A DNA stretch of 64,000 nucleotides, from NCBI GenBank assembly GCA_964057225.1, contig OZ059898.1:14322001-14386000 (forward strand), read 5' to 3'. Positions 20,325 through 44,761 of this stretch are shown here, piece after piece. Position 1 is the first letter of the stretch. Each line of letters starts with the position of its first letter. The notes beneath the pieces are model-generated. The model worked only from the letters and a program-made list of their open reading frames with translations, searched no databases and was not told the origin of the DNA. The translations under genes and the position numbers were made by a program. The stretch is from Auanema rhodensis. Lineage: Eukaryota; Animalia; Nematoda.

Positions 20325-21146
20325 TTACTTATCGGCCTTCTCGCTTTCGGAAATCTTGCGAAGGATTTCAGTTCGCTTGGCTTGCTGTCTGTCCTCTCTT
20401 CTCTTGCGGGATTCCTTATTGCGGTCACGTCTGGCTTGAGCTTGATCACTGGAAAAAAAAAACTAGATGGGAAAGAACAATACAAAGACTTACGCGAGCT
20501 GCTTGGCACGCTTGTTCTCTGACTTCTTCTTGAAGATGTACTCCATAAGGTTCTTCTTGTTCTTGAAGTTGTTACCCTTGGCGCGAAGGTAGAGCTCATG
20601 GTAAAGATGCTTGTCAATCTTCTTGGCCTCACGATATCTCTTGAGCAAGTTACGGAGAACACGCATACGTCTCATCCAGAGAACTTTCTCTGGCATACGA
20701 GCGTTAGCAGTACCACGTCTTTTACCGAGACCGGTGTGACGTCCCTACAATTAAACAAATGAATAAAAAAATAAAAAATACATTGAAAGAATTAAATTAA
20801 AATTATTATGCATAAAAGCTTACCTTTCTTCTGGCTTCGAGGTATTTGCGGGCACGGAAGCGGGAGTGGACGGCTTCTGGCTTACGGATGATAAGTCCAT
20901 CCTTTACCAGACGACGGATGTTTTGTCTGGAGTTGGCATTGGAGATCTCGCTGACCTCGTTGGGGTCAAGCCAGACCTTATTCTTTCCGCACTTAAGTAC
21001 GGAGGCAGCGAGCCGCTTTTGAAGGCGCAAATTACTAAAAATAACATATAAAAAAAGGCAATCATAGTTTCGTTGATAGCTTAACATTAAAAAATCATTT
21101 TTTTAATGATAATTTCAACATAATATACATAAAACACGTACCTCAT
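20325..21146 (-). CDS. rpl-19: 60S ribosomal protein L19 (eL19); 4 exons
   Basis: MS|[52 protein letters not shown]...|[58 protein letters not shown]...KADK*. Confidence 0.98.
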
Positions 21147-21507
21147 GATGCACCTTGTATTCCAGTTACGGAAAAAGTGATCCTATACCCAAAATAATCG
21201 CGTATATCAAAAATTTCCTGAGATAGATGTGCATGTTTATACAGTAATAGAATGATTGCTCCCGCGTCGCACCGCGAGCGTCGTCTTTGGAGCACGTTTG
21301 TAAACTTGTGTTAGTCCATCCTTTCCGTCCCCCCCCCCTTAAACATTTTCAAATTTCTAGGCTACAAAACTTCTTTTTCTATAGCCTTTAGTACACAACC
21401 TAATGAAATATTCATTCTTTTTTTTATAGTTCAAAGCTGAACAGCTTTCAAATCGTTCTCATACATTTACCAACAAACTTCTATAACCATAGAGGCTCTT
21501 TCTCCCA

Positions 21508-24500
21508 ATGGCAGTTTTCGAAATTACACAATTTCCAGATATTAAAACGACAAAACGGTAAATTATTCTCTATTCCTTCGTATTTTCCGCTATTTCTTCC
21601 CTGTTATTTTCACATGAATCCCGATAGGTGTGATCAATATAAAAATCAATGTTTATGTTATAACAGCGTTATATAAAGTGTGCGATTCTTTTCTTGTTAT
21701 CGATTTTTATGTCCCGTATGTTTGCCATTGTAGGCAACTTGGTTTCCCAAATTCAGTCTCTATTTTATAGGTTATGAAAGATTTAGCATACTACATTTTT
21801 GTGATGATAACAGAAAACAATTAGAATAATGTCTCGCATTAACTCATCTTGGGACGAGGAAGATTGTGCCTATCTTTTACGTCAGTTAGGTTAGAACAGC
21901 AATTTTTCATAGACAAATGAATCAACTTTTCAGAATTAACAGCTTTTTCTTCTGTTGTATCTGCTCTTCGTGCTCAAGGAGTTTTTAATAAATTTAAAAG
22001 TGTTGTTCTCGATAGTCTGAAAAGGGTTTTATTGTAAGATTCAATTTTTTTCAATATATTTTCATGAATTTGTTTATTTTAGCATTAATGATGAGCTCTA
22101 CAAAGCAGAAATTCGTAGGGCAGCCAACGATGAAAATCTTACTAAGGTTGCCACAGTGTAAGAAATGTTAGTATGTTTCTAAAATATTTTGAATTTTTTA
22201 GATTAAATCCTTCGTATGATACATTCACTGAATGGGGTTTGGTTAGTGCTGAGGTATTTTTATTTTATATTTTTCACTTTATTTATTGCTGTGTTTTAAA
22301 GTTCGATGATGAATTTGAAGTTCCCCAACCTCGTCTATACGAAGGTGTAGGAACTAATAGTATTGCTAGCTCTCTTCTCTCTCTCGCTACTACGCATAAT
22401 AATGAAATAGATGATTACCGAACTTCTCTTGAGCAATTACTTAACGTTCCCCATATTCCGTATGGTAATTCAATTTTTTCTTTTTTTCGTTGTACTTTAG
22501 CATTGTTTTCTAGTTCCTGAAAGATTACGAAGATATCTTCGAGGCACTGAATATCTCTTTGATATTGATCAACCTCACGTTCCTTCTACATCCCAACCAG
22601 GAATGCGAACCCCTATTGTGAGGAAACGTCCTGCCGATAAAGAAACGCCTATCATTGTGCGTTTTTTTTTTGTTGTCCTATTTACGTTTCTATTATATTT
22701 TAGTTAAAGAGAAATGCTGGTATTCCACCAGTTTTCATTGATACTTCTGTAGAGGCTAGGAGGATCGAAAGACTTCCTGCCAAAAAAATAGTCGAAAAAA
22801 TTTCCGAATCTAGCGCCTTGAGAAAGGAAATGTATGCTCTTATATCAATTTCTTATTTCTTATTTGAATTATTATAGTGAGAAACCCCAAGACATCGCTA
22901 AACCAAGTACTTCCACTGGAATGAGAGAGGTATTTATGGAAATAGGAAATTTTTTAATAAATAATTTTTAGTCAATTCCGACAGATGCTACTATTATGTA
23001 CAAAATGCGCGTTCAAAAGGGTGCCGAAAATAAATTTTCAAAAGGTATAAAAAGTTTAAATGTAAGAAATTAATTTTTCATCTTCAGCTGTTGGTCCCCC
23101 TTCTCTTCCCCACCCAAATACTATGACGGTCTCGAAACTCCCTGAGTCGGAGTTAACTACATATGAGAAGTCTGCGCAAATAGAAGTTGAAGCTCTCCTT
23201 CATAAAATACAAAAACAGATGCAGGAAGAAGCATCGAGGGCCATTGAAACGAAAAAACCCAAAAGAAGACCCCGAAATTCCGAACCTCCCATCGAAAATA
23301 TGGTATATTGATAGTATTTTTTGAAACATTTAATATTGTATTCAATTTATTAGCCCGTTATTCCTAAAACTGCTCCTCGACCTGCAACTCATCTGCCAAT
23401 TACTAACCGGATACCTCACTTGACGGGTCCATCTACTTCATCTCCAACAGCTGGTTAGTTTTTCTATTCTGAAATTTCGATATTAAATGACATTGTTTTG
23501 ATTTTGCAGCAATTGCAAAACGTCCAAGATTAACATCATTATCTGAATTACCATCTACTAGTACAACTCCAAAAGATGTTACTTTAATCAGGACTTCTTC
23601 TGTATCTAATGCCATGAAACCCAAGCCAATTCCTGGATACCTTCCGTAATTTTGAAGATATTGAAAAAAAATTTATTCAATGTCTTCAGGAACGATACTC
23701 ACAAAAAACCAAGGACTCTCTCGCAAGGATCTCCTGTTGCTTTTCTCACTAGTAATAGAATGGTAACAAATAGTTCAGTTAGCTCTTCTAGGCCGCCTCA
23801 GGTTTGTGTAACTGAAAGCCATGATTATAAACATTCATCTCTTTAAAGGCAAGACCGTTAGGAATTTCTCCCTCATTATCCATATCGTCACTGTCATCTT
23901 CGATGATGGCTTCTTCAGAGACTGGATCTCATCATGGACATGATTATGGGGCAACTGCAACAGCGAAGTAAGAAATTAATTTTCATATTACTACGAATCG
24001 TTCAAGTTAATTTTTACAAATCTAACTTTAGTAGGACGATATACAAACCGCTCACCGTTAATCAGCACCAAGAATCATTTTATAAAGCTACAACTGCTAG
24101 AGCTAGAAACCCTCTTACTAATCCTGTTACTCTAGCTTCCCACCACCAAACCCTCCTTCCAGTTGTTCGAAGAGTAAGTATATCACATAGCTTCCCGTTT
24201 TATCAATTTTAGCTGATGATCTATTCCTTCCCTTTATAGGTTGGACATGTTATGTTTAGAAGGGATGCCTCTGGAAATATAATAACTGAACCATCCCAAT
24301 CTTCTTCTTCCCAACTTGGTAGGCGCATGATCGCTACGAATTCTCCTGGTATGTTTTCTTTTCTCGCTGCGTGTATTTAGACTTTATTTTAGTATCCGCT
24401 TCACCTATCGCCGTCGAACGGATAAGAGAAAAAATTGATCAACCGCGAGTAGAACATCCTAACGGTACACATAAAGCAAAAAAAAAGAAGATTGAACTCA

Positions 24501-24761
24501 ACGATCTAATTATAGGTTTGCACGCAGTTCATCCGCACTCCTCTGATGCTGATAGTTCAGTTATCCGCCAGGTAAAGCATTATTTTTATTTTATTACCTA
24601 CATGGCATTTTCAGTTGCCTGTACCCATTCATCGTCCTCACGCCGCTGTCCCCTTTGTCCCCATTGAGGTGCAAAAACCTAATTCGTCCATTCAGCATGA
24701 ATTTCCACCGGAAACGAAAGCGGGCGAAGCAGTTATTTCAAACCTGAAAATTCCACGATGA
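21508..24761 (+). CDS. EMSY: ENT (EMSY N-terminal) domain protein with a long Ser/Pro/Thr-rich disordered C-terminus, EMSY-like
   Basis: Exons near 21825-22250 read MSRINSSWDEEDCAYLLRQLE|LTAFSSVVSALRAQGVFNKFKSVVLDSLKRVLF|INDELYKAEIRRAANDENLTKVA...TEW, matching the EMSY ENT pattern (LRKLELEAYAGVISALRAQG...AEVRRAVNDERL). Start is either 21508 (upstream exon splices in frame) or 21829; TGA at 24759-24761. Confidence 0.8.
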
Positions 24762-26118
24762 GTTTTATTCCATTGATCTTTTCTAGAACTCATATCTCAT
24801 TACCTGTGTACTAATGGCTTTTAAATATCCAACGAAGTCTCTTACTCTGTACTGGTTTTATTTACTTTGAAATCTCAGTTCTGGTGATACTTTATACTGT
24901 ATGTGAATATTTCGCATTGTACAAAATATGTCTGTTTTTATCTGTTTGTATACTAGATCCCACATTTGTTCCCGATGTTACTAGTTGAGTCGAAATCGGT
25001 GTGTTATCTTGTTTCTTAGTTATGTTGTTTCTCTAATGAACGCTAGTGAACTAAACAAACTTTATTGTTTCGGAAATCTATTTTGTTCATTTTATTGGTA
25101 GATGGAGGTAATGTTCCTCCGGTCACAGATTATCTACAATAAGACACGAGCAAAATACGATGAAAGTTAGTCTAATTTCTATATATATACAAGTAATAAT
25201 GCTGGAACACCAAGGAGACGCAGCACAAAGAAAATAGAAAGAAATTATGCAACTTTTGATAGACAATGATAGTATTAGACTATTTATATATTATACACGA
25301 GTACTTAATTAAAAAATATCACAACACTCGAGATGGAAATACAAAAAATGAAAGAAAAGTAGGAAATGTGAGGTGAATTAAAACGAAATCTTACACAATT
25401 TCTTAAAAGTGGAAAAAAAAAGGTTCGTTTCTTAAAGAGTTAATGATAAAATGACTAGCAGATCATAAGCGATTCGAAATAATAGAATGACAACTTAAGA
25501 GTACAACTGAAGAAGTGCATGCTTAAAAGACAACAATTATACAACAAGACCATGATGATTGTTTGATATATTAATGGTACGCTTAAACCCACAACCAGCT
25601 GCTAGGACATTCGGAAGCTGTGATGGAAGTGGGATAACTTCATATTTTGCGAATTGAAAAGAAGTTATATTCTTGAGCTTTTAAAAGCGAAAGGTAGTTA
25701 AATCTTTGGTGAATATGGAGGGAATACTGGACTTCGTTAGATTCACATCCACAAAACTTGGAAACGTTATATGATATGGATTACCTTACATATTATGTTT
25801 GCCGATTTTTGCTACGACAATAACACGCAAAAGTATCCGAAAACAATGATTAAATCTTCTTTGAATAGATTCGTCTCACAAGATGAAAAAATCATGAAAA
25901 AGGTGCCTTAAAAGGCCTAAATCCTCAAATATGTATTCCGAGTTAAAAGAAAAATTAAATGCAACAACTAATAGCTGTTAACTTCTCAAGTAATCTTTTT
26001 GATTAAAAACTTTTTCAACTTCAATAATAATCTCCAAATAAATTGAGGCTCCACCATAGGACCTCCGAATGTCCTACTACAATAGCAAAGATAAATGAGT
26101 ATACTTACAAAAGTGAGC

Positions 26119-28575
26119 TCAATGAAAGAGTTCGGGGCTAGCTGGAGGGCCTTGTCGAGCGGGGTGGCGTTCACGACGAACGACATCTTCATTTTCATCT
26201 GTGGAGGAGTCATCACCATTATTTTCTCCAACACCAACATCACCCCCTTGTAAAGCCAAGTCAGCCTACAGAATTCAGAATTATATAAATTAAATACGCT
26301 TGCGAGAAAATAACGTACCCGAGGAAGAGCTTGATTTTCCGCATTAGGTTCCTTCACCTCGCCAGCATCCAAAAAATCCCAGATGAGAATAGTGTCATCA
26401 TGAGACGAGGAAACAATTTGAAAATCATCGAATTGCAGACGGAAGACTCTTCCGGTATGTTGCTACAATAAAAGAGTTACAATGAATAAAAAAAATAAAT
26501 AATATTCTAAAAAAGCCGAAAATAATAACAAAACTTACAACAAGAGTGCTTAAGCACAAACACCCAGGAAGCGAGCGAGAATCAAGGGCAGCTTCAAGGT
26601 CCCAGACTTTGATTTTTCTGCAAGTTTTGAAAACGTAACAAACTACATATATTAAAATTATAAATACCCGTCATATGCACCAGAAACTATTCTTTTATCG
26701 TCAAATCTAATGCATCTGACTAATTCTTCATGCCCTTCCAAAACTCGTAAACATACGCCAGAATATATGTCCCATAATCTTTAATTTAGAAAAGTTAAGT
26801 AGGTATAGGTTTGAAAACAAGATTACCTAATAGTATTATCACTAGATCCCGAAACGACAAGACGGCCTCGGTACTGTAAGCAAGCAATACCTCTTTTGTG
26901 GCCTGATAAAGTACGGACAAACTCAAGTGAATCAGCAGACCAAACCTAAACAAAAAAATTAAATAAAAACAAATACTAAAACCATACCTTGATAGTTCGA
27001 TCACCAGAAGCACTAACAATGTACCTCTCGTCAAAATCTACAACGTTTACAGCAGCCCGGTGTCCCACCAACACTCTCCTCATGTTTATTTCTCTAGGTG
27101 ATACCATATCCCAAACAGCGATTGATCTATCTTTTGAACTAAAAAGATAGCGTACTCAACATGGAGAAGCACAATAACAAACCAAGTAACCATGACACCA
27201 TCACTGAACCGTAAATGTAACACAGCTTCACAATGATGTATTAAAGTATTTAGACATTCTCCAGTTTGAACATCCCATACTCTTACAGTAGCATCAGAAG
27301 AACCTGAAATTGGCTCATTAACACAGAACATACTGCAATAGACTTACCCGAAATTATCACTCGATTATCATATTGTAAACATAAAACGGAACCCGTGTGA
27401 CCCGATAGGATCCGAGGATTACTTAAATCATGACGATCCCATATCTAATGAAAAATGAATGTATACGAAATATCGTGAGCTGGTCTTACTTTGATTGTAT
27501 TATCACGTAATCCAGATACAATTTTATCATCATCATATTGAAGGCAATATACTCCTATATTATGCAAAATGACTCACATAAACAAAAAATACAAACCTTT
27601 GCTTTGGTCTGATCGGCAATTTATTCGACTGAGAGTATATCTTCCTGTCCTCCAATTTGTTTCTATTTTGGATATATCAGTAATAACTTGTGGATATAAA
27701 TCTCTGAAACAAATATTATTTTTTTTAAATCATTAGTGTATCACCAAACCTATAAAAGTTGTGTTGTAGCATAAACATTTCAAAGGTACCCCTGTATTGC
27801 TCATATTTTTTACCGTGTCTTTCACATATTAACTGCGCAGCAGCTTCACGTCCAATAAGTACAAAATTCTTCCTTTAAAATTAATCTTACACATTTTAAT
27901 AAACATTGAAATGCCAAACCATTTTCTTTTTTCACTCAGACCTCTCCACAAATTGTCACTGCGAACATTACGCTCAATAAGTTTACGCCAGAGCTGGCCA
28001 ACAGCTAGTATATTTCTCCAACTACTACACACAGCTTCACAAGCTGATAAAGATTTCGCATCAAGATTTTGCAAGATCATAACGGCTAATTGGGCTTGAA
28101 AATAAAAGTAAAATTAGGAGCACATGCAAAAATTACTTACATGGTAAATGCGAAATGAAATCTCTCTGTAGCATAGGCCTTATATATCTATCAATATGTC
28201 CAATTTGATAATGACCCATATGTTGTAAAGCTCTCTCCATGAAGTCACGCTGTTCATGTTCATTCCAGCTTTGAAATGTCTAAAAAAGTAAAAATATTAT
28301 ATTAATAACTTTAGATGCAAGAACATACCCCAAGCATTTTTTCATGATTACTCAGATATGCTGGTCCTAAATGTTTCTCCTTATTAATATCTTCGGCTAA
28401 ACTTAAATCTGCTAGTAAATCAGTAGTGGTCGCCGAGGCGTGCTACAATGATATTAATAAATAAAAAACAATGGTAATCAATACTCACTACATCACCGGG
28501 ACCATCCATTTGGATGTCATTATCAAGTTTTGATTCTTTGATTAAATTAGCATCCCCACCAGCCGATTCTTCCAT
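26119..28575 (-). CDS. lin-23: F-box/WD40 SCF substrate receptor, beta-TrCP/Slimb/LIN-23
   Basis: Dimerisation domain ([26 protein letters not shown]), F-box ([20 protein letters not shown]) and 7 WD40 repeats ([25 protein letters not shown]; [12 protein letters not shown]; [11 protein letters not shown]; [12 protein letters not shown]; [31 protein letters not shown]). Ends ...PPASPELFH*. Confidence 0.96.
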
Positions 28576-29009
28576 TCCTCGAAAAAAATAAAGAAAAAAA
28601 ACCTGTAAAATTATTTAAACAAACAGTCATCAACAGTAACGAAAATGATAACGTTTCAAGCAAGAACCAATAAAAAGCATAAATATTAGCATAGAGTAAT
28701 TTTAATAAAGAGCAATATTAAAAATAAAAAAATTTCAATTAAATTTCTTTAACGAACTTATATCACTAGAAAATTAAGCATTTGTTGGAAAGCTATTTGT
28801 ATAAGGAGGTTTACCGTAATTTCGTTCCGCGCGGGACCAGACACTACTTATTTTTCTATTTAAATAGCTTTTTCTTTTATGCAAATGTTCAATACTTATT
28901 GTAATTATGCGAAAATTCTTGAATAAATAACAGCTTTAATTTTATATAAAAATTTCAGGCAGAATTTTTTATATCCGTTGTATCCAGATAGAAACCCAAG
29001 CACTGCTTC

Positions 29010-30242
29010 ATGAAACGAGGACGGGGCAGGGGACGGTATGAATGGATGATGTTATTTTTTATTGTTTTTGTTATTTTTTTTAAGAGTTCGACCAGATAAT
29101 ACTTTTGATAGGAGGCGAAGAACTGGTTTACAAACTTTACAGGTTTTCGAAGAGTTTAGTACTCTTTAAATACATTTTTCTGCAGGGTAGAGCGCCTGAG
29201 CAGCGAAGAACTCGCTCTAGAAAAGATGATGAAGATATTAGTGCTTCAAATACGTAAGTCATAACTCTTTTTCTTATAAAATTTGAATTTGTTATCAACT
29301 CTAATCAATATTAGAGAAACAACTGAAGTGAATTCTGCTAGAAGATCAAATCTTTTCAAAAGCTTTTGTCCTACTCGTACACCATATGCTAGAGCAACAT
29401 TTAGAACTCACACAGCGTTTTCGTTTAAAGTAAGATTATTTAAGGTATTTAATTTGTAAACTTACTCACTTCAGCATTACAAATTTACCAAAGGAGATAT
29501 AATAAGTGTAGTTGATGAACTAGATAATAAACCTTATTTTGCTCAAATACGTGGAATTATTAGTGATCCAACTTTTCAACCATACGCTGCCTTAACATGG
29601 TATGTTTTCTAGTTATTCGCATTTCTACCTTTTGTGTCTTGAGAAATCACCAAGCTAGTCATTTTCTAAATGTTCTGAAAGCGGAACCGACGGTTTCTTT
29701 GAACAATAGAATGATTCACGCTAAATGGCTGGCTTGGCTTTATTCTCTGTAATTTTCAGTTTTCCATGAATTTCAAATATATTCAAATTAAATATTTTCA
29801 TTATTCAAGTATTTGAAGCTAATCTGAATTGTTCAAAGAAAACTATTTTTTTTCGGTAGCAATTTCAGACATCTTGTTTCTAAATTTTTTTATGATAATA
29901 AATATTTCAGGTTAGGACCTAAACGCACATGTGCCGATGCTCATGTATTTCATCCTGAACAATTTGTTCACGCCTTCCCTGATAAAAAGCTTTACCATTT
30001 TAAAGTAAGTTAATGTGCTGTGATCGATGATTATCTATGACTCGTTTCAGCATTTTAATTGGATCTCAACTAGGCCACGCTTGCCTTCATATGTTTGTGA
30101 TATATCTGAAAGAAAAATAATTGCTGATAATATAATAAGAGTTCTTCGAGAACGTTTACTAGAAATCTCAAAATTAGCAGAGGAAGAGCTCAAAACAGTT
30201 CACAGAAGTCCCGTTGACTTTATGCATAAAGAGAAATCCTAA
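29010..30242 (+). CDS. GATAD1: GATAD1-like chromatin protein: C-terminal BAH-like domain, no GATA zinc finger; 7 exons
   Basis: MKRGRGRGR...RRSNLFKSFCPTRTP...AFSFK|HYKFTKGDIISVVDELDNKPYFAQIRGIISDPTFQPYAALTW|LGP...FHPEQFVH matches recalled human GATAD1 (YQIGDVVSVIDEQDGKPYYAQIRGFIQDQYCEKSAALTWLIP). TTTCAG acceptor near 28958 precedes the ATG. Confidence 0.8.
29650..29737 (+). ncRNA. Candidate structured intronic RNA element (88-nt stem-bulge-stem)
   Basis: CCAAGCTAGTCATTT (29650-29664) pairs with AAATGGCTGGCTTGG (29723-29737): 15 bp including two G-U pairs. Inner stems are TCTA/TAGA, TGTTC/GAACA and GGAACC/GGTTTC. Confidence 0.35.
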
Positions 30243-30649
30243 GTTTAATAATATTTCGTTTAATATTAACAACTTTTAAAGTTTCATCCTCCACTTTTTC
30301 CTAAATTTAATTTAATTTCTGATTGTACTATTAATATATTCTTTTTTATCTTTATATTTGTTTTAATTTGTATTAATATTGGATACAACAAACTACATAA
30401 CGTGTAATTAACATTTTCAATAAAGAATGGTGATCATAATAGAGTCTATTCATTAGTTGTTGCTGTCATACTAAAATGAACGCATGTTGAATGAAATGAT
30501 AAGAACTAGAGTCTAGTTCGTGTTTTTTCCATGTGTGCTCTCATTCTCTTCACCTCTCTCTACAATACGCTCTTACAATCTGGTTTTCGATAATCGTCGT
30601 CAAGGCAAAACTATCAATTCTAAGTGTGAGGCCTTTCCATACGGTGACC

Positions 30650-32675
<2,026 letters not shown>

Positions 32676-35329: not shown

Positions 35330-35897
35330 GATGTATGTGCAACTGAAAAATTCATTTCAAAACGATAATAGGAACATATAACAGTTAGAATGACGCATGA
35401 GATATCATAAGATCGACAAGAGCAATATTAGCGTGAGAACGCTCCGCAGATAGACTACAAGAATCTGGAGACTATAGTAGTTCGACGTTGACAAACAAAC
35501 AACGATCTATTACATCTGACATCAAGGTACAGACGAAACAAATCAAATGATACGACAACACAGTCTGGCCACACAAAGAGCAGCACTGGACAATGAGAAT
35601 GGCCAAACTACTCACAGTTGTTTCAGGACCAAAGAGCTAAATCATTGTAGAAAGGCGGATAATGAAGATAATGAAGCAATTTGCACGAAAAGTCAAGCAA
35701 AGTACATACGAAGTGCAGAGTTTAAAGGATTCATCAACAGATATCCTCATTCCTAGCTTTATGAACGACGAGCAATATAGACAATATAGAATATTAAGGC
35801 ATACAATTCATCGTCGAAGGCATTCAGGTGTCAAGAAATGGTAGAGAGACCAGAAGCGAGCACAACGACAACGATGATGATTGTGGCCTCCCTTCGC

Positions 35898-35934
35898 TTA
35901 TATATACTCGCCCGCCGCGATCATGTTGTGCAAT
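35898..35934 (-). promoter_or_regulatory. Putative asns core promoter: TATA box plus a C/EBP-type bZIP site
   Basis: On the minus strand, GTATATATAA (35907-35898) is preceded by ATTGCACAAC (35934-35925), about 550 nt upstream of the acceptor at about 35343. This fits an outron or a 5'-UTR intron. Confidence 0.5.
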
Positions 35935-37554
35935 CTTAGTGGTAAGATGATGATGAGAATAGACAGTGTGCGGAATGCAGAGAGTGCAGAGAAAATGACG
36001 AAAAGATCGTCAGATAGAGTACACGCAAAGCGGAGGGTTCGAAGTGATATATAACCAAAAGGAATATTTGTTGATATTCTGGATGAGTAATTAAGATCCT
36101 TCGGTATCATCTATGAACATCATCTAACTGATGATTTTTACACTTATCTGATTAGTCGATTGTTTTTTCCGTTTTCGATCTTTTGGATATCTGAGTGGGG
36201 CATATGTATATGAGGATCATTACAGGAATGTGAGACCTCATATGACAATCTTCCTATTGTTTATATGAAAATTCATCAAGTTCAATTTATCAAACATGGC
36301 GATCTAATAGAATAAGAGGCAAGACTGGAAAAATGGGGAAAACCCTATTGTATCTCATACTTTTCTCATTATTTTCCCGTTGTTTCAGTGTCGAGATTAA
36401 CAGTTTTTTGATCAAAAACTATGAAAAACGTGAAATTATTTTCTATTTCTATCAATTTAATCTATTTATAAACTATGTTATTTTATTTAAAATCTAAATA
36501 TTTTTAATTGAATGACGTTTTCCTATCTTTTTCCATTAAATTACGTGTATTTTGAAAAAAATTATAATGTCCTTTGAAAAAAGTTTGTAATGTTTAATTT
36601 CTAAAAAACAATATTTCAAAGATTGATTAGAAGGTAAAAAAACTGGTTGAAACATAGACATTTGCACGTTTTTCACGTTATTCACGTTGATCACGTGAAC
36701 ATAGTATAGATATTAGCATAGAGGGATCAGTGTTCAAACAATGCTTTCGGATGAGTTTAGACTAACGTGTCTGCTGCTGCTGTTTATTTGATCATTTGAA
36801 CTATGATCAGGAGGATATTCATAAAACTAAATGATTTATATCTTTACATATAACACCTAACAATATATATTATCTAAATTTATTTTAAATTTTTGTTTCT
36901 AAAAAAAACATTTTTATATTGTAAATTAATTTTGCATTGATAACTAGTATACTAACATTCTATTGCTTTTGCTATAACAATGTCAACGTGTAATTTTCTT
37001 TCAAAACAACAAAACAAAAACAATGAGAAGAGTGGTGGAGGGGGGGGGGAAGCGAGAAATATAGTAAAAACTGCAACCAACGCTCCTTCTCGTTCTTTTC
37101 TCCTTATACATTTCACGTGAAAGACACACGACATATCGTTGTTATATATCAGTTAAGACTCAATAACTATTCTATTTTACGTTTAGAATGTGGGTTAAAC
37201 CATAGTGAAATAGTTTTTTTTTTCTTCAAATACTTCCTGTCCTTAATGTTCGTCGAAACAAAAATGTTTGAGTTTGCGTGCACGTGAAATAATCTTTCGA
37301 TGAGCATTGAAGTTAATTCAATGAAATATTATATGATATAGTATAAAGTCCAATAAGTACCTGTTACCAATAGATTGATGTCTATTCTTTGAACTTGAAT
37401 GCTCGGTTAGTATTTGATATAACGGAAAACAAAAATTTAAAAGTTCATTTCAAACGATAGTATTAAAGAAGTAGGAAATATTTTTACAAACAGGATCGTC
37501 CCTTATGATCATTGAACGGCTTTAATTTGCACAAACTGAATGAAAGAACATCCA

Positions 37555-39859
37555 TTACTTGCGAGTATAGATTTCTGGTGCTGAAATACATTTTATTTAG
37601 TTTTTATATATTTTATTTAAAAAAAAAAACAAATTGATGTCTAATATAAGAATTGTATTAACCTTTTTCTGATGATCTTGACCAGGAAGCCTTGCTATAG
37701 TCATCAATATCGTGATATCTGTAAAAACAATGCAATGTGCATAAGTTCAAACAAATCAGATTCCAACCTATCTCGTAAAACAGCTTCCAATTCTTTTTGA
37801 TGTTCTTTTCCACGAGTTTCAGCAATTACTTTGCATTTAACAGAGTAAACATCTTGTCTTAAGAAAGCTCTTTCCTAAAACCGTGAAAATCAATTAACAA
37901 TTGCTTCGTTTGCAGAAGAAATTCTATTATTCTTATCAATTCGTTTCAAATTTTTGGATTAGTTCTTACCAAGAACATATCTTTTAGTGAAGCTCCTGTG
38001 TCTGAAATGATCTGTGCTAGCTCAGCTACTCCACCTGGTCTATCTGATACTACCACACTAAACCGGACCAAGCGATGATCAAAGGCCATTCCTAACATAT
38101 TTTATTTAACAATTCGATATTTTCTTTTGTAATACCTCGTTCAATACATCTTCCCAAAGCTGTAGAATCAATGTTTCCACCAGTAAGTACACTTACAACC
38201 TTTTTTCCTTTCAAATCATCAAGCTGACCAGACAATAATGCTGCAACTCCAATAGCGCCAGCTCCTTCACACACAACCTAAGACAACAATTGTTAAAACT
38301 TGAAACTGGCCTCCACAAGGAACTTTATTTTGAAATAAAATGTTCAGATAGTACCTTTTCACATTCAATAAGACGAAGAATAGCAACAGCAATATCACGT
38401 TCACGTACAGTGACAAGTCTATCGATGCGATCTAGAATTTTATGATAAAAAAGGCTTAAAAGTAGTAAGCAACATACTTTTCGTGGTATGGAAAGCGTTA
38501 ACTCCTACTAGTGGAACAGCAAGACCATCAGCTAATGTTGGCTTACATTTAGTGAACTGAGGAGAACCTTGCTTGATAGAATTCTGAACATAAACCATTT
38601 ATAAAATAAAAAAATTGGCATACAAATTACCAATAAAGATGGACATGTCTCTGGGTTAACACCGATAATCTCAATATTTGGTAGAAGAGATTTGACGGCT
38701 ACTGATACACCAGCAATAAGTCCACATCCTCCAGTTGGAACTAGAATAGCATCAACGTCTTTAACCTGTAAACATCATCATATTCAACCAGATATTTTTC
38801 TGCCGAACTTGATCTAAGATTTCCAAGCCGATAGTACCAGCTCCAGCCAAGATATCAATGTGATCATATCCATTAATATATTTTCCTCCTTCCTTATTAG
38901 CCATGTCAATGGCGATTTTTCGTGAGACGCTAATATCTTTACCCTAAATATATGATATAATTAAGATTTAGAATTAAAATAATACGAAAATGAAGTAATT
39001 TACCTCTACATGAACATTTGATCCTAATTCGCGACATTTTGTGATTTTCATGATTGGTGCATGTCGAGGCATAACCACATTAACGGGAACTCCTATAACT
39101 CAGTAGTATTTCATGTAAAATTTCATTTTTTTTGTTTCTTTTATTATTGAAACTTCATACCTAATTGCTTTCCATGTAAAGAGAGAGCTAAAGCATGATT
39201 TCCGGCCGAAGCAGCAAACACCTAAAATGAAATAGAAACTTGAGGGACATTCAATTAATCTTAGAATGCGAATAAAGCAAATTGAATAGAAAACATACTC
39301 CTCTGGCCTTCTCTTCTTCCGTCAAGTTCAATAAGGCCCAACGAGCTCCTCTCTCTTTGAAGCTACCCGTATCCTAACATATTTTATTGAACTGTGTTTT
39401 TGAAAAACCGTGAAAACCAACTTGATTTACTTCCATTTTTAAAAATACATCCATTCCTGTTAAACTAGAAAGATGACGTGACTTACGACAATCAGTTCTA
39501 ATAATTCCATCCTAAATTGTCTTCGTGTGAATTCAAATATTGAAGAAATTTAAATGTTTTACCTTTATACGATGATGAGCCATAGAAATTTGTGTATAAT
39601 TAAGTTCAAGAGGGTCATTGGGATCACAGTATGGATCATCAACTTCCTAAATTTATTTAAATTGTATCTTCTTTTTATTAAAAATGCTTAAACGAACCTG
39701 AGTAGTTGGTTTTGGACTAGCATTGGATACGGAGCAAAAATTATTGATACGACATGCTGAAGCAAATGATCAGATTGATCTTATCTGAATGGATAAGTAG
39801 TAAAAGTGAAGCTCACCTAGTACGTTATGTTTTCTAATAATTCGAGCTATTTGGTTCAT
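37555..39859 (-). CDS. PLP-dependent serine/threonine dehydratase (deaminase) with a C-terminal ACT domain
   Basis: KMEVNQ|[10 protein letters not shown] (PLP-binding lysine); [11 protein letters not shown]; [20 protein letters not shown]; [11 protein letters not shown]; TLADGLAVP; [11 protein letters not shown]; LTGGNID; ACT domain [17 protein letters not shown]. First exon [14 protein letters not shown] joins in frame. Confidence 0.92.
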
Positions 39860-40233
39860 ATTGAAAACGCTTATGAATCTTTGAAATTTTCTAAATTAAA
39901 ATACCATAAAGCCAACGAAAAACAAACAAAAACGAAGATAAGTAAAAGTCAAAAAATAGGCACACTCAATAAAATATTGAAGATATACGTTTTAGAAATG
40001 GAAGAAACATCTGAGAAGTCATTCTTCCGAAAGAGTATAGAGAGATTGAAAACCAAGGAGAAAGAAAGAGAACATGAAGATAGAAAAGTGTACTGATACA
40101 TAGCATGAGCACTGCGAGAAATTGAGTTTAGAGGGAAAAATCGATTTCATGTTGCTTAGAAGCACTTCTGAATGGAGAAAAAGAGATGAAAATGAAAAAA
40201 AGAAAAAAGGGAGGAAGAGAAAGAGGGAGAGGG

Positions 40234-40236
<3 letters not shown>

Positions 40237-40309
<73 letters not shown>
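40237..40309. repeat. (GA)n microsatellite
   Basis: About 36 AG units with one interruption. Confidence 0.95.
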
Positions 40310-42616
40310 AAAGGAAGAGGATATGATAGATATGATGATTGAGAGAAATTCGATAGAATATCAAAGTTTTTACATATGTTAAGCTGAAATCATGAAAACT
40401 AAATCTCATTCAATCCGGAAAATATGTATCATCCACTATGAATAATTATTAATAAAATATATATTTTAAATAAAATAGCTTAACTAAAAGATTAGCATAT
40501 GCGAATAATACTGAAATCAAGCACAAATTTTGAAGCATGGAAATGCTGATGTGCTATATGATGTAACTTTTAAAGTTCAGCAAATGATCATCAGAAGTTG
40601 GTCATGATGATCTATCAATTTATTGCTTGTCAAAGATAATAAAAATAGAGAAAAAAGATTCAATAATGTAAAGTTCATGTATGTTTCTTAATTGAAGTAA
40701 TAGCTTATCAATAGTCTTAATATAGGTTATGAATAATAGATGAATACATCACATAAAATATAGAGAAATAGACACAGAGAGAAAGAGAGAGAAAGAAATA
40801 AAAAGAAAAAACATGATTGAACAACCGCTCAACCGCATCTTATTTTTAGAAAAAGAAATTGAGAAAAGCTCATCCTTCCACGCGTCACACGTGATTGTCA
40901 AATAGCTCGTATTTAAACTTCTTTATAGTCCGAATAGACTAAATAAATAATTTTTTAAAATTCAATCAAATTCGAACACATATACTGATCTTTAAAGATT
41001 TCACATGAGAGGCTTTTCTTCAAACATTATCGTACGTTGTTGGGTTTTTTTAAAGAATATATTTTAAAGAAAGAATTTTATTAAAATTTGAATTGAATTT
41101 GCAGTTTTCTAATTAAAAAAATTCAAATGTTTTTTGGAAAAAAAAATCAGACATACGTTTTATTTAATATTTTACACATAGATCATTAGAAAATCGTAAA
41201 ACTATACCTGTTTTTCTAGCATCTTGTGTTGCTTTAGATTATTCAGGAATTACAGTCAGCATCAAGCTTTACTTATAACAATATAACCAATAAGATATTT
41301 TAAAAGAAGATACTTTAGTTTAGGTGTATCACTTTTCAAATCAGATAATTTGGCCATGTTTTACGTTTCAGCTACCACGTCCAACGCTATCTTGCGTTTG
41401 AATTTCTTTTAAGCTTATATTTCAAAACTGGTAAAGAAGGTTAGTTGTTTATTAAGTTTATTATATAAACTATTATTAAAAATATAATTATTTGATAAAA
41501 TTTGTTTTACATTTTGTGATTTTTCAACATTATAAACGATATCACCGTATAGAAATACAATTTCGAATAAGAATAAAACTATTATGAATAAGGAAATTTA
41601 ACTTTTATTGGTATATAGTTGCAATATTGCCAGAAATGTTCGTCAGATTCATCTAATTATTTGAAATAAATATTTTTGTTGTTTCGAATATTTCAAATTA
41701 TCTAATATTTGAATTGATATATCCTTAGTTCTTAAGTAGTAGTTCTTACAATCTTTAGCTGTTTTCTAATTATCATCTTTTAAAAAAAGATAGCCATATC
41801 AATCAATAAATTCTAAGGAGGTAAAATGCTGGTCAAAGAGATCAAGCTTTGGCTTAAAAAGTTATTAAAATATTTTAAAACAACAAACTTTTGTATTTTT
41901 TTTTTGAAAATAATTGATGTTTGTAAGTTATGCTAATGAGCTTCCACGCAAAAATACAATTTGAATTTGAATTAAAACTTGAGTTGTGTTGATTGAGTGT
42001 AAATATATGTTTCATCGACTATTTATGAATATTACTATCTAATTCTAACCTATAAGTTGCATCTAATAGCATAGTTTCGTTAAAGTTCTAAATTTCAAGT
42101 TGTATGTTTCATCATTAGTATATGATGAGATCTTTTTCAAGTATATTGTAAATGAACTTTTGCGCAGGTTATTAAAAAATAATTTTCCTATTAAAATATA
42201 ATTATAAATGAAGAAAATATGAGATATAAAAGATTTATGTACTATAATCGTAGTAAATTTCATATACAGCTTGAGAATAGACTATAAAGCACCGCATGAA
42301 GGTCATTTCCAGTTTTGAAAACGGAAAAAAACGATGAAAATACCGCGAAAAGCTGGCATCTCCAGATAAATTAGCTCGTTTTCGAACGTTTTGACCGGTC
42401 ATTCACAAGAGTTTGTTGAGACAATTTGTATACAAACAATATGGAAGGAAAAAAACGAATAAACTATACTTATTAGGATAATTACATTGAACATGATGCA
42501 ACATATGCCCCGTGGCCATGCAAATACATGGCCATATTATAATTTTATATATAGCTATATATATATATATATATACTTATTCCAATTATTAAAAGGTAAG
42601 TTAATAATTTAAAAAA

Positions 42617-42652
<36 letters not shown>

Positions 42653-42861
42653 GGAAGGGGTTAATAGAAAGGGTAAGAGAGGGGGGGGGGGCAGTTGTCT
42701 GAATACAGGGCGGAGAGGGAAGGGGGGGGGGTGTAGGGGAGATTGAGTGATATGTTAAAATGGGAGAAAAGATCACAAAGAAATGTATATTCATGTGTTT
42801 ATATATATATATATATTTATATTATTCCTCTTCTAAGATTCATCTAATGAATGCTCATCAT

Positions 42862-44761
42862 CTATACATCTTCAACCAGTTCAACTTCATCATCGTTAAG
42901 CTCTGTTAGCTTCGACGATAACGATTCTACTGGTGGTAGGATAGGAGTATGCGGCACAACATGATCAGATTCTGTCTGTAAAATAGAAGAAACAGTTAAT
43001 GAATGGGTAAAGAGATATAGTTAAACGAACCGAAGTATCTAATGTTGATGTCGGGCTATGCATAGGTGACATGTTGATTGGCGATTCAAATAACGTTGTC
43101 GTTTGAGTATTGCCATTGGTATCCATCATGTTTGAGCTAAAAAATCAATAAAATTAGAAAATGCTTGTTGAAATAGATAGGAAACCTTTCGTCACTTGTT
43201 CGGGTGGAAGAACTGAACGAACTATCATTACTGACAGTACTTGCCCAGCTCTTAGGACGTTGTCGCTCCATTTCTACGCGATGGAAATCGAGATCAGTAG
43301 CATATCGAGACTGTAAGCGATTCAGCCATCGTTCACGATGACCGGCTTCCAGGGTATCAATAGCATAGGCATCTGATTTGGCATCATCCCAAACTTCAAA
43401 TCGATTTGAGCCAGTTTTTGATGCATCACTGAATCCAAGAGAGGATGTCTGTAAGTATATGAATGATTTTTCAATAATAAATAAGAATAGAACATACAGG
43501 AATACACATTTTGTGTTCGTAGTATTCAGGGTCCATTTGAGAAGGTTGACTGTTTGGTGGGCTTCGTTTCTTACAGAACAGAAGGCCACCGTCAAAGAGG
43601 AAGAGATGTCTACGTTGCGCTCTTGTAACTTTCGTCTTCTTCTTGCGATTGTACGTATAGACATCACATTCAGATTGTAATCTTAAAGCTCCCAATAACC
43701 TCAAATCTCCCTAAAACATAAGAAACATTAGCTTTAAATATATGGAAAATCTAGTGAAACTGCTTCATATAATCAGAAAACACTTACGTTAAAACCGGAA
43801 ATGTGTAGTTGGTGAATGGCAGCATTAATCTGAGCTAAAAGCTCCAGCATTGTGGCCAGTGTAGATGACACTTCCGGTCGTACCTGTAAAATTTTAAAAT
43901 CACTGACTAATAAGGACTAAATGATATTAAGCATGCTGCAATATAATTTAGCTGAAACATACCTCAGGTCGACAATGTCTTTCAAGTTCGCGTAGCAACA
44001 ACTGATATTTGGTTATTCTTTGTACAGGCTTCAGGAGATAAGCACTAAGAGGTAATGGATGATTGGCTTTCTGTTGACATTCCTGCAAAAAACATATTTT
44101 TGTGATTGATACTAGATAGTTGAAGTGGTCTTACCGCGAAAAATGGTGAATTATCTACATATTCTCTGCGCACTTGCTCACTCGTTGATTTGTTTTGACA
44201 ATATGAGTAGTACAGTGAGAGGTATCTGTAGAAAGGACATCATGCTTGAGTTCTCTAACGGATTCATTAAGTTACATACCTGTGTCGTTGTTGTAAGAAT
44301 GTTCTACAGATTCCAGAAGGCGAATTCTCATTGGCAAGAAGGTCGGGCAAGACAAATCGGGAATGAAAGAGATGTAGGTCACGCAAGTTTCCTGAAAGTA
44401 ATTCGTGAGCTTTTAAAAGAAATTGAGTCTTTGAGTTTTTCGTCCCCATATTATAAATCATCTTTCAAATTTACGATAAAATTAGAAAATATATTGAGCA
44501 CATACAAACAGAAGAACAAGATAATTGCGGAACGGAAAGAGATAGAGAAATAAAGAGTAAAATATGAAGAGAAAGAGGAAAAGACAAGACATGGAGGACA
44601 TCCTATGTTGCAACTTCGAGACCACCTCATTCCACTTCTCCCCCAATCGTTAGGTGTATGATTTTATATTCCACTTTTCAATTTCTTTAGCCAACGGTCG
44701 AAGATGATTAACCACAATCAGTTGTTGATAAGTTAAGGTGTTCAGAGGTGAATAGAGAATG

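What the first reader, a model, noticed from the sequence alone, without database searches (positions are those of the whole stretch)
21508..30242. EMSY-like and GATAD1-like genes, partners in one mammalian chromatin complex, lie about 4 kb apart
Seen: an ENT-domain gene (21508-24761) and a GATAD1-like gene (29010-30242) on the same strand, separated only by lin-23. Known: mammalian EMSY and GATAD1 co-purify in the SIN3B/HDAC/KDM5A/PHF12 complex at H3K4me3 promoters. Inference: this nematode keeps an EMSY-GATAD1 module whose two genes are physically linked, and each sits head-to-head with a housekeeping gene (rpl-19 and lin-23). I know of no description of such a locus; the linkage could still be chance.
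Basis: partly seen in the sequence, partly recalled or inferred. Interest (0 to 1): 0.75.

Follow-up and report, generated by a model that had tools for sequence, protein, structure and literature searches.

The report
Linked worm EMSY and fingerless GATAD1 genes
This roundworm really has genes for two partners of a known chromatin-silencing complex lying 4 kb apart, but the closeness looks like ordinary inherited gene order rather than a functional unit.

Summary
An EMSY-like gene with a true N-terminal ENT domain lies on the + strand; its start is more likely 21829 than 21508, and it ends at 24761. A GATAD1-like gene (29010-30242) lies on the same strand. Only lin-23/beta-TrCP lies between them, on the - strand. 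Each gene is head-to-head with a neighbour: rpl-19 (680 bp) and lin-23 (434 bp).

The GATAD1-like gene is a single-copy relative of animal GATAD1 through its conserved core, which folds as a BAH domain. Like the five other nematode relatives found, it has no GATA zinc finger.

The "module" reading is only partly supported:
- Auanema sp. JU1783 has the same arrangement, but as part of an eight-gene block that is collinear throughout, so this says nothing about selection on the pair.
- In Steinernema hermaphroditum, Drosophila erecta and a bee, nothing within 10 kb of GATAD1 is EMSY, lin-23 or rpl-19.
- The other complex subunits (SIN-3, MRG-1, KDM5) are on other contigs of this genome.
- The two genes cannot form an operon.

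One weak, post hoc hint of shared control is a rare motif in both bidirectional promoters.

Verdict: two new members of known families, with clade-limited, probably neutral linkage. Interest is low.

The parts
20325..21149 (-). rpl-19 (ribosomal protein L19e). Its first exon is a mini exon of five bases that begins with the ATG at about 21149.
   Evidence: Pfam Ribosomal_L19e at 96.3 bits and Ribosomal_L19e_C at 106.6 bits on the exons. The exons are 92-94% identical to Auanema rpl-19. Exon reading.
21150..21828 (.). Divergent intergenic region between rpl-19 and the EMSY-like gene (680 bp). It holds a conserved core next to rpl-19 and a CG-rich element, with TCCCGCG at 21260.
   Evidence: 81% identity to Auanema over the first roughly 180 bp. 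TCCCGCG occurs only twice in the whole window, here and at 28830.
21829..24761 (+). EMSY-like gene. Exon 1 is 21829-21889. The ENT domain lies in exons 21934-22033 and 22083-22157. The rest is long and poorly conserved.
   Evidence: Pfam ENT hits on the two exons. PDB human EMSY hits. Only ENT locus in the genome. The start matches the Auanema annotated start. Further exons are conserved with the Auanema ENT gene up to about 24466.
26119..28575 (-). lin-23 / beta-TrCP (an F-box and WD40 subunit of the SCF ubiquitin ligase).
   Evidence: Beta-TrCP_D 55.8 bits, F-box-like 36.4 bits, WD40 31.7 bits. The exons are up to 100% identical to the Auanema gene, which carries the same Pfam families.
28576..29009 (.). 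Divergent intergenic region between lin-23 and the GATAD1-like gene (434 bp). A conserved non-coding block of about 70 bp lies at 28781-28848 and includes TACCGTAATTT (28812) and a CG-rich palindrome (28826-28838).
   Evidence: Alignment with Auanema. Motif searches.
29010..30242 (+). GATAD1-like gene without a zinc finger. Exons: 29010-29035, 29191-29253, 29315-29429, 29475-29599 (BAH-like core), 29911-30004 and 30051-30242. About 204 codons.
   Evidence: phmmer hits to GATAD1. Exons collinear with GATAD1 relatives. Profile hits to insect GATAD1. Single copy in the genome. No finger. The fold of the orthologues is BAH.

Best explanation
The locus holds two ordinary, separately transcribed genes. 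They are the single-copy nematode orthologues of EMSY (an ENT-domain protein) and of the conserved BAH-like core of GATAD1, which here lacks the GATA zinc finger.

By inference from mammalian proteomics, both proteins probably join a SIN-3 / HDAC / MRG-1 / PHF12 (ATHP-1) / KDM5 (RBR-2) type complex at active promoters. In that picture the ENT domain serves as a dimerising and protein-docking module, and the BAH-like domain with its C-terminal helix serves as a chromatin or partner-binding module.

Their 4-kb proximity is a feature of one rhabditid lineage's local gene order: B9 | rpl-19 | EMSY | lin-23 | GATAD1-like | CYP | asparagine synthetase | RhoGEF. It was inherited as a block and is not a unit kept together by selection.

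Shown here: gene identities, arrangement, copy number, block collinearity with Auanema, and absence of the linkage in three more distant animals. Inferred: complex membership, biochemical roles, and neutrality of the linkage.
For: - ENT identity.
- GATAD1 identity.
- BAH fold of the conserved core, from the model of the Plectus orthologue (core pLDDT above 90). VIA-align Z 9.7, 9.5 and 9.4 to the EBS, AIPP3 and DNMT1 BAH domains at rmsd 2.5-2.7 A over 83-86 residues, with the top 14 rows all BAH. Foldseek E 6e-4.
- The whole 21.7-kb Auanema locus is collinear with window 19650-45100.
- Within 10 kb of GATAD1 in Steinernema hermaphroditum, Drosophila erecta and Andrena cerasifolii, only the GATAD1 core exon matches anything in window 19-36 kb.
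- Sin3, MRG and PLU-1/KDM5 matches lie on contigs C3, C7 and C4, while the window is on C6.
- The two promoters share no more 10- to 12-mers than shuffles.
- Mammalian EMSY and GATAD1 co-purify with SIN3B, PHF12, MORF4L1 and KDM5A (PMC8143632; PMC9309374).
Against: - For a pre-specified pair, lying within 8 kb in a 181-Mb genome has a chance of about 1e-4, so pure coincidence of the original juxtaposition is unlikely unless many candidate pairs are allowed for.
- Both bidirectional promoters carry a similar core, TAC[C/A]GTAAT followed by a CG-rich element. In Auanema the exact 11-mer occurs only twice in 21.7 kb, once in each of the two promoters, and it is a rare word genome-wide (63 copies).
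- Only two nematode genomes outside the window could be examined, so how far the linkage extends is poorly sampled.
- No expression or interaction data were available.
Confidence: 0.75

Rival explanations
1. The two genes form a co-regulated chromatin module. Selection keeps them close in this rhabditid clade because their two bidirectional promoters share a cis-element or chromatin domain that sets matched dosage of two directly interacting subunits.
For: - The arrangement, both head-to-head pairings and both intergenic lengths are kept in Auanema despite saturated neutral divergence.
- The TACCGTAATTT motif is exact at window 28812 and at both Auanema promoters in the same orientation, and is rare genome-wide.
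- TCCCGCG occurs only in the two promoters of the 64-kb window.
Against: - The motif was found post hoc.
- At the window's own EMSY promoter it is degenerate: TACAGTAATAG, three mismatches.
- TCCCGCG is not kept in Auanema.
- All eight genes of the block are collinear, not just the pair.
- The linkage is absent in Steinernema, Drosophila and a bee.
- An opposite-strand gene separates the two, so they are not an operon.
- The other subunits are dispersed.
Confidence: 0.12
2. The GATAD1-like gene is not a functional GATAD1 counterpart. It is a generic small BAH-domain protein, so there is no EMSY-GATAD1 pairing in this worm and the adjacency is meaningless.
For: - It has no GATA zinc finger.
- It has no Pfam family of its own.
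- UniProt calls the Steinernema and Heterorhabditis relatives only 'BAH domain-containing protein'.
- C. elegans SIN-3 proteomics papers mention neither EMSY nor GATAD1.
Against: - Apart from one repeat-rich 1,806-aa protein (P0018), every hit in the whole-library search whose sequence was read is a GATAD1 or a nematode relative of it. No other BAH family was seen among them.
- Similarity extends over four collinear exons, including the basic motif upstream of the BAH core and the region after it.
- The profile retrieves named insect GATAD1 at E about 1e-14.
- The nearest ESM Atlas clusters are GATAD1 clusters.
- It is single copy.
Confidence: 0.06
3. The adjacency is a relic of an ancient linkage in bilaterians or ecdysozoans, lost in most lineages.
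For: Both families are old and single copy. The arrangement is present in two rhabditid genera.
Against: - It is not seen in Steinernema, Drosophila or Andrena.
- In Steinernema and in the bee, GATAD1 sits next to a Mago-bind (PYM) gene instead. This hints that a different neighbourhood is the older one.
- From memory, not checked here: human EMSY is at 11q13 and GATAD1 at 7q21.
Confidence: 0.04

Closest known systems
Human and Drosophila EMSY (ENT-domain subunit of the SIN3B/KDM5A 'EMSY complex' and of the fly LID/RPD3 complex)
   Same: A single ENT domain at the extreme N-terminus, collinear with Pfam PF03735 and with human EMSY residues 27-82, followed by a long, fast-evolving, low-complexity body. 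One copy per genome.
   Different: Much shorter than human EMSY. Outside the ENT domain it is barely alignable even to Auanema, at 30-55% in a few exons. No obvious HP1-binding PxVxL-type motif was seen after the ENT domain by eye. Partners are untested.
Vertebrate and insect GATAD1 (GATA zinc finger domain-containing protein 1)
   Same: The conserved core, with motifs GD(I/V)(I/V), PY(Y/F)AQIRG and AALTW; the basic motif before it; and the segment after it. About 53-58% identity in the core exon. The core folds as a BAH domain.
   Different: No N-terminal GATA-type zinc finger in the window gene, nor in the Auanema, Steinernema, Heterorhabditis and Plectus relatives. Vertebrate relatives, the invertebrate P0040, and those insect relatives with a Pfam record carry the finger. 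The nematode C-terminus ends in a long helix instead of the vertebrate tail.
Methyl-lysine-reading BAH domains (EBS/SHL, AIPP3, BAHCC1, DNMT1 BAH1, ORC1, TNRC18)
   Same: Best structural neighbours of the GATAD1 core: Z 8-9.7, rmsd 2.1-2.7 A over about 85 residues; Foldseek probability 1.00.
   Different: A minimal BAH of about 90 residues, under 20% sequence identity to these domains, below Pfam BAH threshold. Whether an aromatic cage exists was not tested.
Nematode operons and conserved bidirectional gene pairs
   Same: Two tight head-to-head pairs (680 and 434 bp) with conserved promoter cores, as is common for nematode housekeeping genes.
   Different: EMSY and GATAD1-like are not in one operon, because an opposite-strand gene lies between them. 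Their linkage goes no further than general block collinearity.

Membership tests
EMSY (ENT-domain family, Pfam PF03735) | ENT domain recognised by the family profile | tested here: met
   Two adjacent exons match profile positions 10-41 (21.1 bits) and 43-65 (16.1 bits). Each alone is below the 28.5-bit cut-off and only their rough sum exceeds it. The joined protein was not scored, by rule. Both exons also hit human EMSY in register.
EMSY (ENT-domain family, Pfam PF03735) | ENT domain at the extreme N-terminus of a long, otherwise unstructured protein; single copy in animals | tested here: met
   The ATG at 21829 lies about 20 codons before the ENT match. It is the only ENT locus in the genome. 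The Auanema orthologue is 980 aa with ENT as its only Pfam family.
EMSY (ENT-domain family, Pfam PF03735) | Association with SIN3B/HDAC/KDM5A/PHF12/MRG15 and HP1 binding | not testable with these tools
   Needs AP-MS or co-IP. C. elegans SIN-3 proteomics papers do not mention EMSY.
GATAD1 | Conserved C-terminal core (BAH-like) shared by all GATAD1 orthologues | tested here: met
   phmmer E 2.6e-14 to about 1e-4 against GATAD1 proteins. Named members. Profile hits to insect GATAD1. Four collinear exons.
GATAD1 | N-terminal GATA-type zinc finger (Pfam PF00320) | tested here: not met
   No C-x2-C...C-x2-C frame anywhere in 24762-30300. The gene starts with a short basic peptide, like Auanema P0002. 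The nematode relatives scanned have no PF00320 hit, while vertebrate ones do. So it is filed as 'GATAD1-like, fingerless', not as a GATA-finger protein.
GATAD1 | Single-copy orthologue (no paralogue that could be the true counterpart) | tested here: met
   One match to the core exon in the 181-Mb genome.
beta-TrCP / LIN-23 | beta-TrCP D domain, F-box and WD40 propeller | tested here: met
   55.8, 36.4 and 31.7 bits on separate exons. The Auanema gene has the same architecture.
Functionally selected gene cluster or module | The adjacency outlasts general synteny, or the genes are co-transcribed | tested here: not met
   It is kept only inside a fully collinear block. It is absent within 10 kb in Steinernema, Drosophila and Andrena. 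An opposite-strand gene lies between the two. Sampling is thin: only two other nematode genomes could be reached.

The most novel reading that the evidence does not exclude
In this rhabditid clade, EMSY and the fingerless GATAD1 are kept side by side because both bidirectional promoters are driven through one shared, rare cis-element (TACCGTAAT followed by a CG-rich palindrome). This would give matched dosage of two directly interacting subunits of a SIN-3/KDM5 complex. It would be a small chromatin-regulator 'regulon' built from two divergent promoters rather than an operon.
Probability: 0.1. Interest if true: 0.5.

Novelty: new member of a known kind. Interest (0 to 1): 0.25.

Why it matters
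If the linkage were selected, it would be a rare animal case of partner subunits kept together by shared promoter logic. The evidence does not point that way.

What remains useful is modest:
- Nematodes outside Caenorhabditis keep clear EMSY and GATAD1 counterparts, which the C. elegans SIN-3 literature I read does not mention.
- The nematode GATAD1 has shed its zinc finger and kept only a BAH-fold core plus a helix. This marks that core, not the DNA-binding finger, as the conserved working part of GATAD1.
- That in turn suggests testing the core as a histone or partner-binding module.

Tried and rejected
- Word-index protein search with the Auanema orthologue found only itself. With a mixed nematode alignment it found only Steinernema relatives.
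- Contig look-ups for the Steinernema glaseri, Plectus and first S. hermaphroditum isoform failed because those sequences are not on record.
- A metagenome scan with the core exon gave three short contigs with no informative neighbours.
- I could not reach full-length nematode EMSY, LIN-23 or RPL-19 proteins. So Caenorhabditis, Pristionchus, strongylid and filarial synteny could not be tested.
- The first fold (Auanema protein, 425 aa) gave only weak hits, dominated by its long helix. The Plectus model resolved the BAH fold.
- The idea that the 1355-aa neighbour of Drosophila GATAD1 is EMSY was rejected: it has no ENT domain, only CCCH fingers.
- Reading the 21508 ATG as the start was rejected.
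All window searches were exon by exon, by reference.
Full report
**What is there**

The window is G000:C6:14322001-14386000 of a 181-Mb nematode genome. Earlier notes of this scan call it rhabditid. Its closest relative reachable here is Auanema sp. JU1783.

From 19.6 to 45 kb the order of genes is:
- a B9-C2 gene (+)
- rpl-19 (-)
- an ENT-domain gene (+)
- lin-23/beta-TrCP (-)
- a GATAD1-like gene (+)
- a cytochrome P450 (+)
- asparagine synthetase (-)
- a RhoGEF (-)

This order rests.

**EMSY-like gene**

Exons 21934-22033 and 22083-22157 match consecutive halves of Pfam ENT: positions 10-41 at 21.1 bits and 43-65 at 16.1 bits, against a cut-off of 28.5 bits for a whole protein. They also match consecutive stretches of human EMSY in the PDB, 1uz3 residues 27-58 and 61-82.

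A six-frame search of the whole genome with the ENT profile finds only this place.

The ATG at 21829 opens a short first exon whose product aligns with the annotated start of the Auanema ENT protein, and the exon-intron layout is the same. The stop is at 24759-24761.

Outside the ENT domain only a few exons are recognisably shared with the 980-aa Auanema protein.

**GATAD1-like gene**

I read six exons from 29010 to 30242, about 204 codons. No Pfam family covers it.

The core exon was searched against 1.84 billion representative proteins and gave 42 hits. Apart from one repeat-rich 1,806-aa protein (P0018), those whose sequences were read are of two kinds:
- Vertebrate GATAD1, such as sheep XP_042105079. 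The full-length vertebrate hits scanned carry a GATA finger.
- Nematode proteins from Auanema (CAI4221594.1), Steinernema, Heterorhabditis and Plectus. The Plectus one is named GATAD1 by UniProt.

Four window exons are collinear with these proteins. A profile built from the nematode members plus the window exons retrieves named insect GATAD1 proteins at E 1e-14 to 1e-10. The gene is single copy.

There is no GATA-type finger in any frame between 24762 and 30300, and none in the other nematode proteins. Loss of the finger therefore looks old within nematodes.

**Fold of the conserved core**

No spliced window protein was folded. Instead I folded database orthologues with a 37-38 row family alignment.

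The Plectus model has pLDDT above 90 over residues 120-210. Its best structural neighbours are BAH domains:
- EBS: Z 9.7, rmsd 2.6 A over 85 residues
- AIPP3: Z 9.5
- DNMT1 BAH1: Z 9.4
- ORC1b, Rsc2, ASH1L, PBRM1 and TNRC18: Z 8-9

The top 14 rows are all BAH. Foldseek gives E 6e-4 and probability 1.00 to DNMT1 BAH1.

The ESM Atlas places the Auanema protein nearest to GATAD1 and BAH clusters.

I found no paper in the library that describes a BAH domain in GATAD1, although UniProt labels two of the nematode proteins as BAH-containing.

**Arrangement**

- The rpl-19 ATG (about 21149, -) and the EMSY ATG (21829, +) are 680 bp apart.
- The lin-23 ATG (28575, -) and the GATAD1-like ATG (29010, +) are 434 bp apart.
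- The EMSY stop and the GATAD1-like start are 4.25 kb apart, with only lin-23 between them.

**Is the linkage more than gene order?**

1. Auanema sp. JU1783 has the same arrangement. But an exon-by-exon tblastn shows its entire 21.7-kb locus to be collinear with window 19650-45100, all eight genes included. Conservation of the pair there is no more than conservation of everything around it.
2. In Steinernema hermaphroditum, the genes within 10 kb of the GATAD1-like gene are CLASP, prefoldin/RNase PH, GCN5L1, Mago-bind and a BEACH protein. In Drosophila erecta they are Dredd, a CCCH-finger protein, an Rbx1-like gene and a SET gene. In the bee Andrena cerasifolii they are PQ-loop, Mago-bind and a clathrin adaptor small chain. 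A tblastn of every open frame of window 19-36 kb against these three loci finds only the GATAD1 core exon.
3. In this genome the Sin3, MRG and KDM5 (PLU-1) matches are on contigs C3, C7 and C4, so the complex as a whole is not clustered.
4. The two genes cannot be co-transcribed, and the two promoters share no excess of 10- to 12-mers.

For a named pair, lying within 8 kb in 181 Mb has a chance of about 1e-4. A genome-wide reading that is open to any known partner pair, however, expects a few such cases. That last step is my estimate, not a computation.

**A weak counter-hint**

Both divergent promoters have a conserved core. It contains TAC[C/A]GTAAT followed within a dozen bases by a CG-rich element.
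- The exact 11-mer TACCGTAATTT is at window 28812. In Auanema it is at both promoters, in the same orientation, and nowhere else in that 21.7-kb locus.
- Genome-wide the 11-mer is rare and not enriched: 63 copies against 89 for the reversed control.
- TCCCGCG occurs only twice in the 64-kb window, once in each promoter, but is not kept in Auanema.
- The window's EMSY-side copy of the 11-mer has three mismatches.

The pattern was noticed post hoc. I rate it a lead, not evidence.

**Comparison with what is known**

Mammalian EMSY and GATAD1 co-purify with SIN3B, PHF12, MORF4L1 and KDM5A (PMC8143632; PMC9309374). Searches found no paper on nematode EMSY or GATAD1. The C. elegans SIN-3 interactome paper mentions neither protein.

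Whether Caenorhabditis has these genes could not be tested.

**Verdict**

The genes are new members of known families, with a fingerless GATAD1 as a clade feature. The linkage is best read as clade-limited, probably neutral microsynteny. Interest is low.

Noticed in passing
window 28781-28848 and 21230-21290; L002 1720-1790 and 9780-9850: Both bidirectional promoters share a core of TAC[C/A]GTAAT plus a CG-rich element. The exact 11-mer TACCGTAATTT is at window 28812 and at both Auanema promoters, yet it is a rare word genome-wide (63 copies). A non-coding block of about 70 bp is conserved between the two genera in the lin-23/GATAD1-like promoter.
   Followed up: partly
L003 12311-12919 (Steinernema hermaphroditum); L005 8262-9272 (Andrena cerasifolii); G000:C7:13015320: GATAD1 lies directly next to a Mago-bind (PYM) gene in both a nematode and a bee. 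This may be an old microsynteny. In the window's genome the Mago-bind gene is on another contig.
   Followed up: partly
P0037 residues 120-211; window 29315-30004: The conserved core of GATAD1 folds as a minimal BAH domain whose nearest solved neighbours read methyl-lysine. No paper in the library describes this. Nematode GATAD1 keeps this core but has lost the GATA finger, which points to the BAH core as the essential part.
   Followed up: partly
L003 10001-12316; P0033, P0046, P0047: In Steinernema annotations the GATAD1-like gene is fused to the next gene, GCN5L1/BLOC1S1. This is probably a gene-model merge of two neighbours, or possibly an operon.
   Followed up: no
window 30243-30650: The GATAD1-like stop is followed on the same strand, after about 300-400 bp, by a cytochrome P450 gene. 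The gap is about 345 bp in Auanema. A two-gene operon is possible.
   Followed up: no
window 35351-42865: The gap between asparagine synthetase and the RhoGEF gene is about 7.5 kb here and about 3 kb in Auanema. No long open frame lies in the extra DNA, only a CT-rich simple repeat near 40200.
   Followed up: partly
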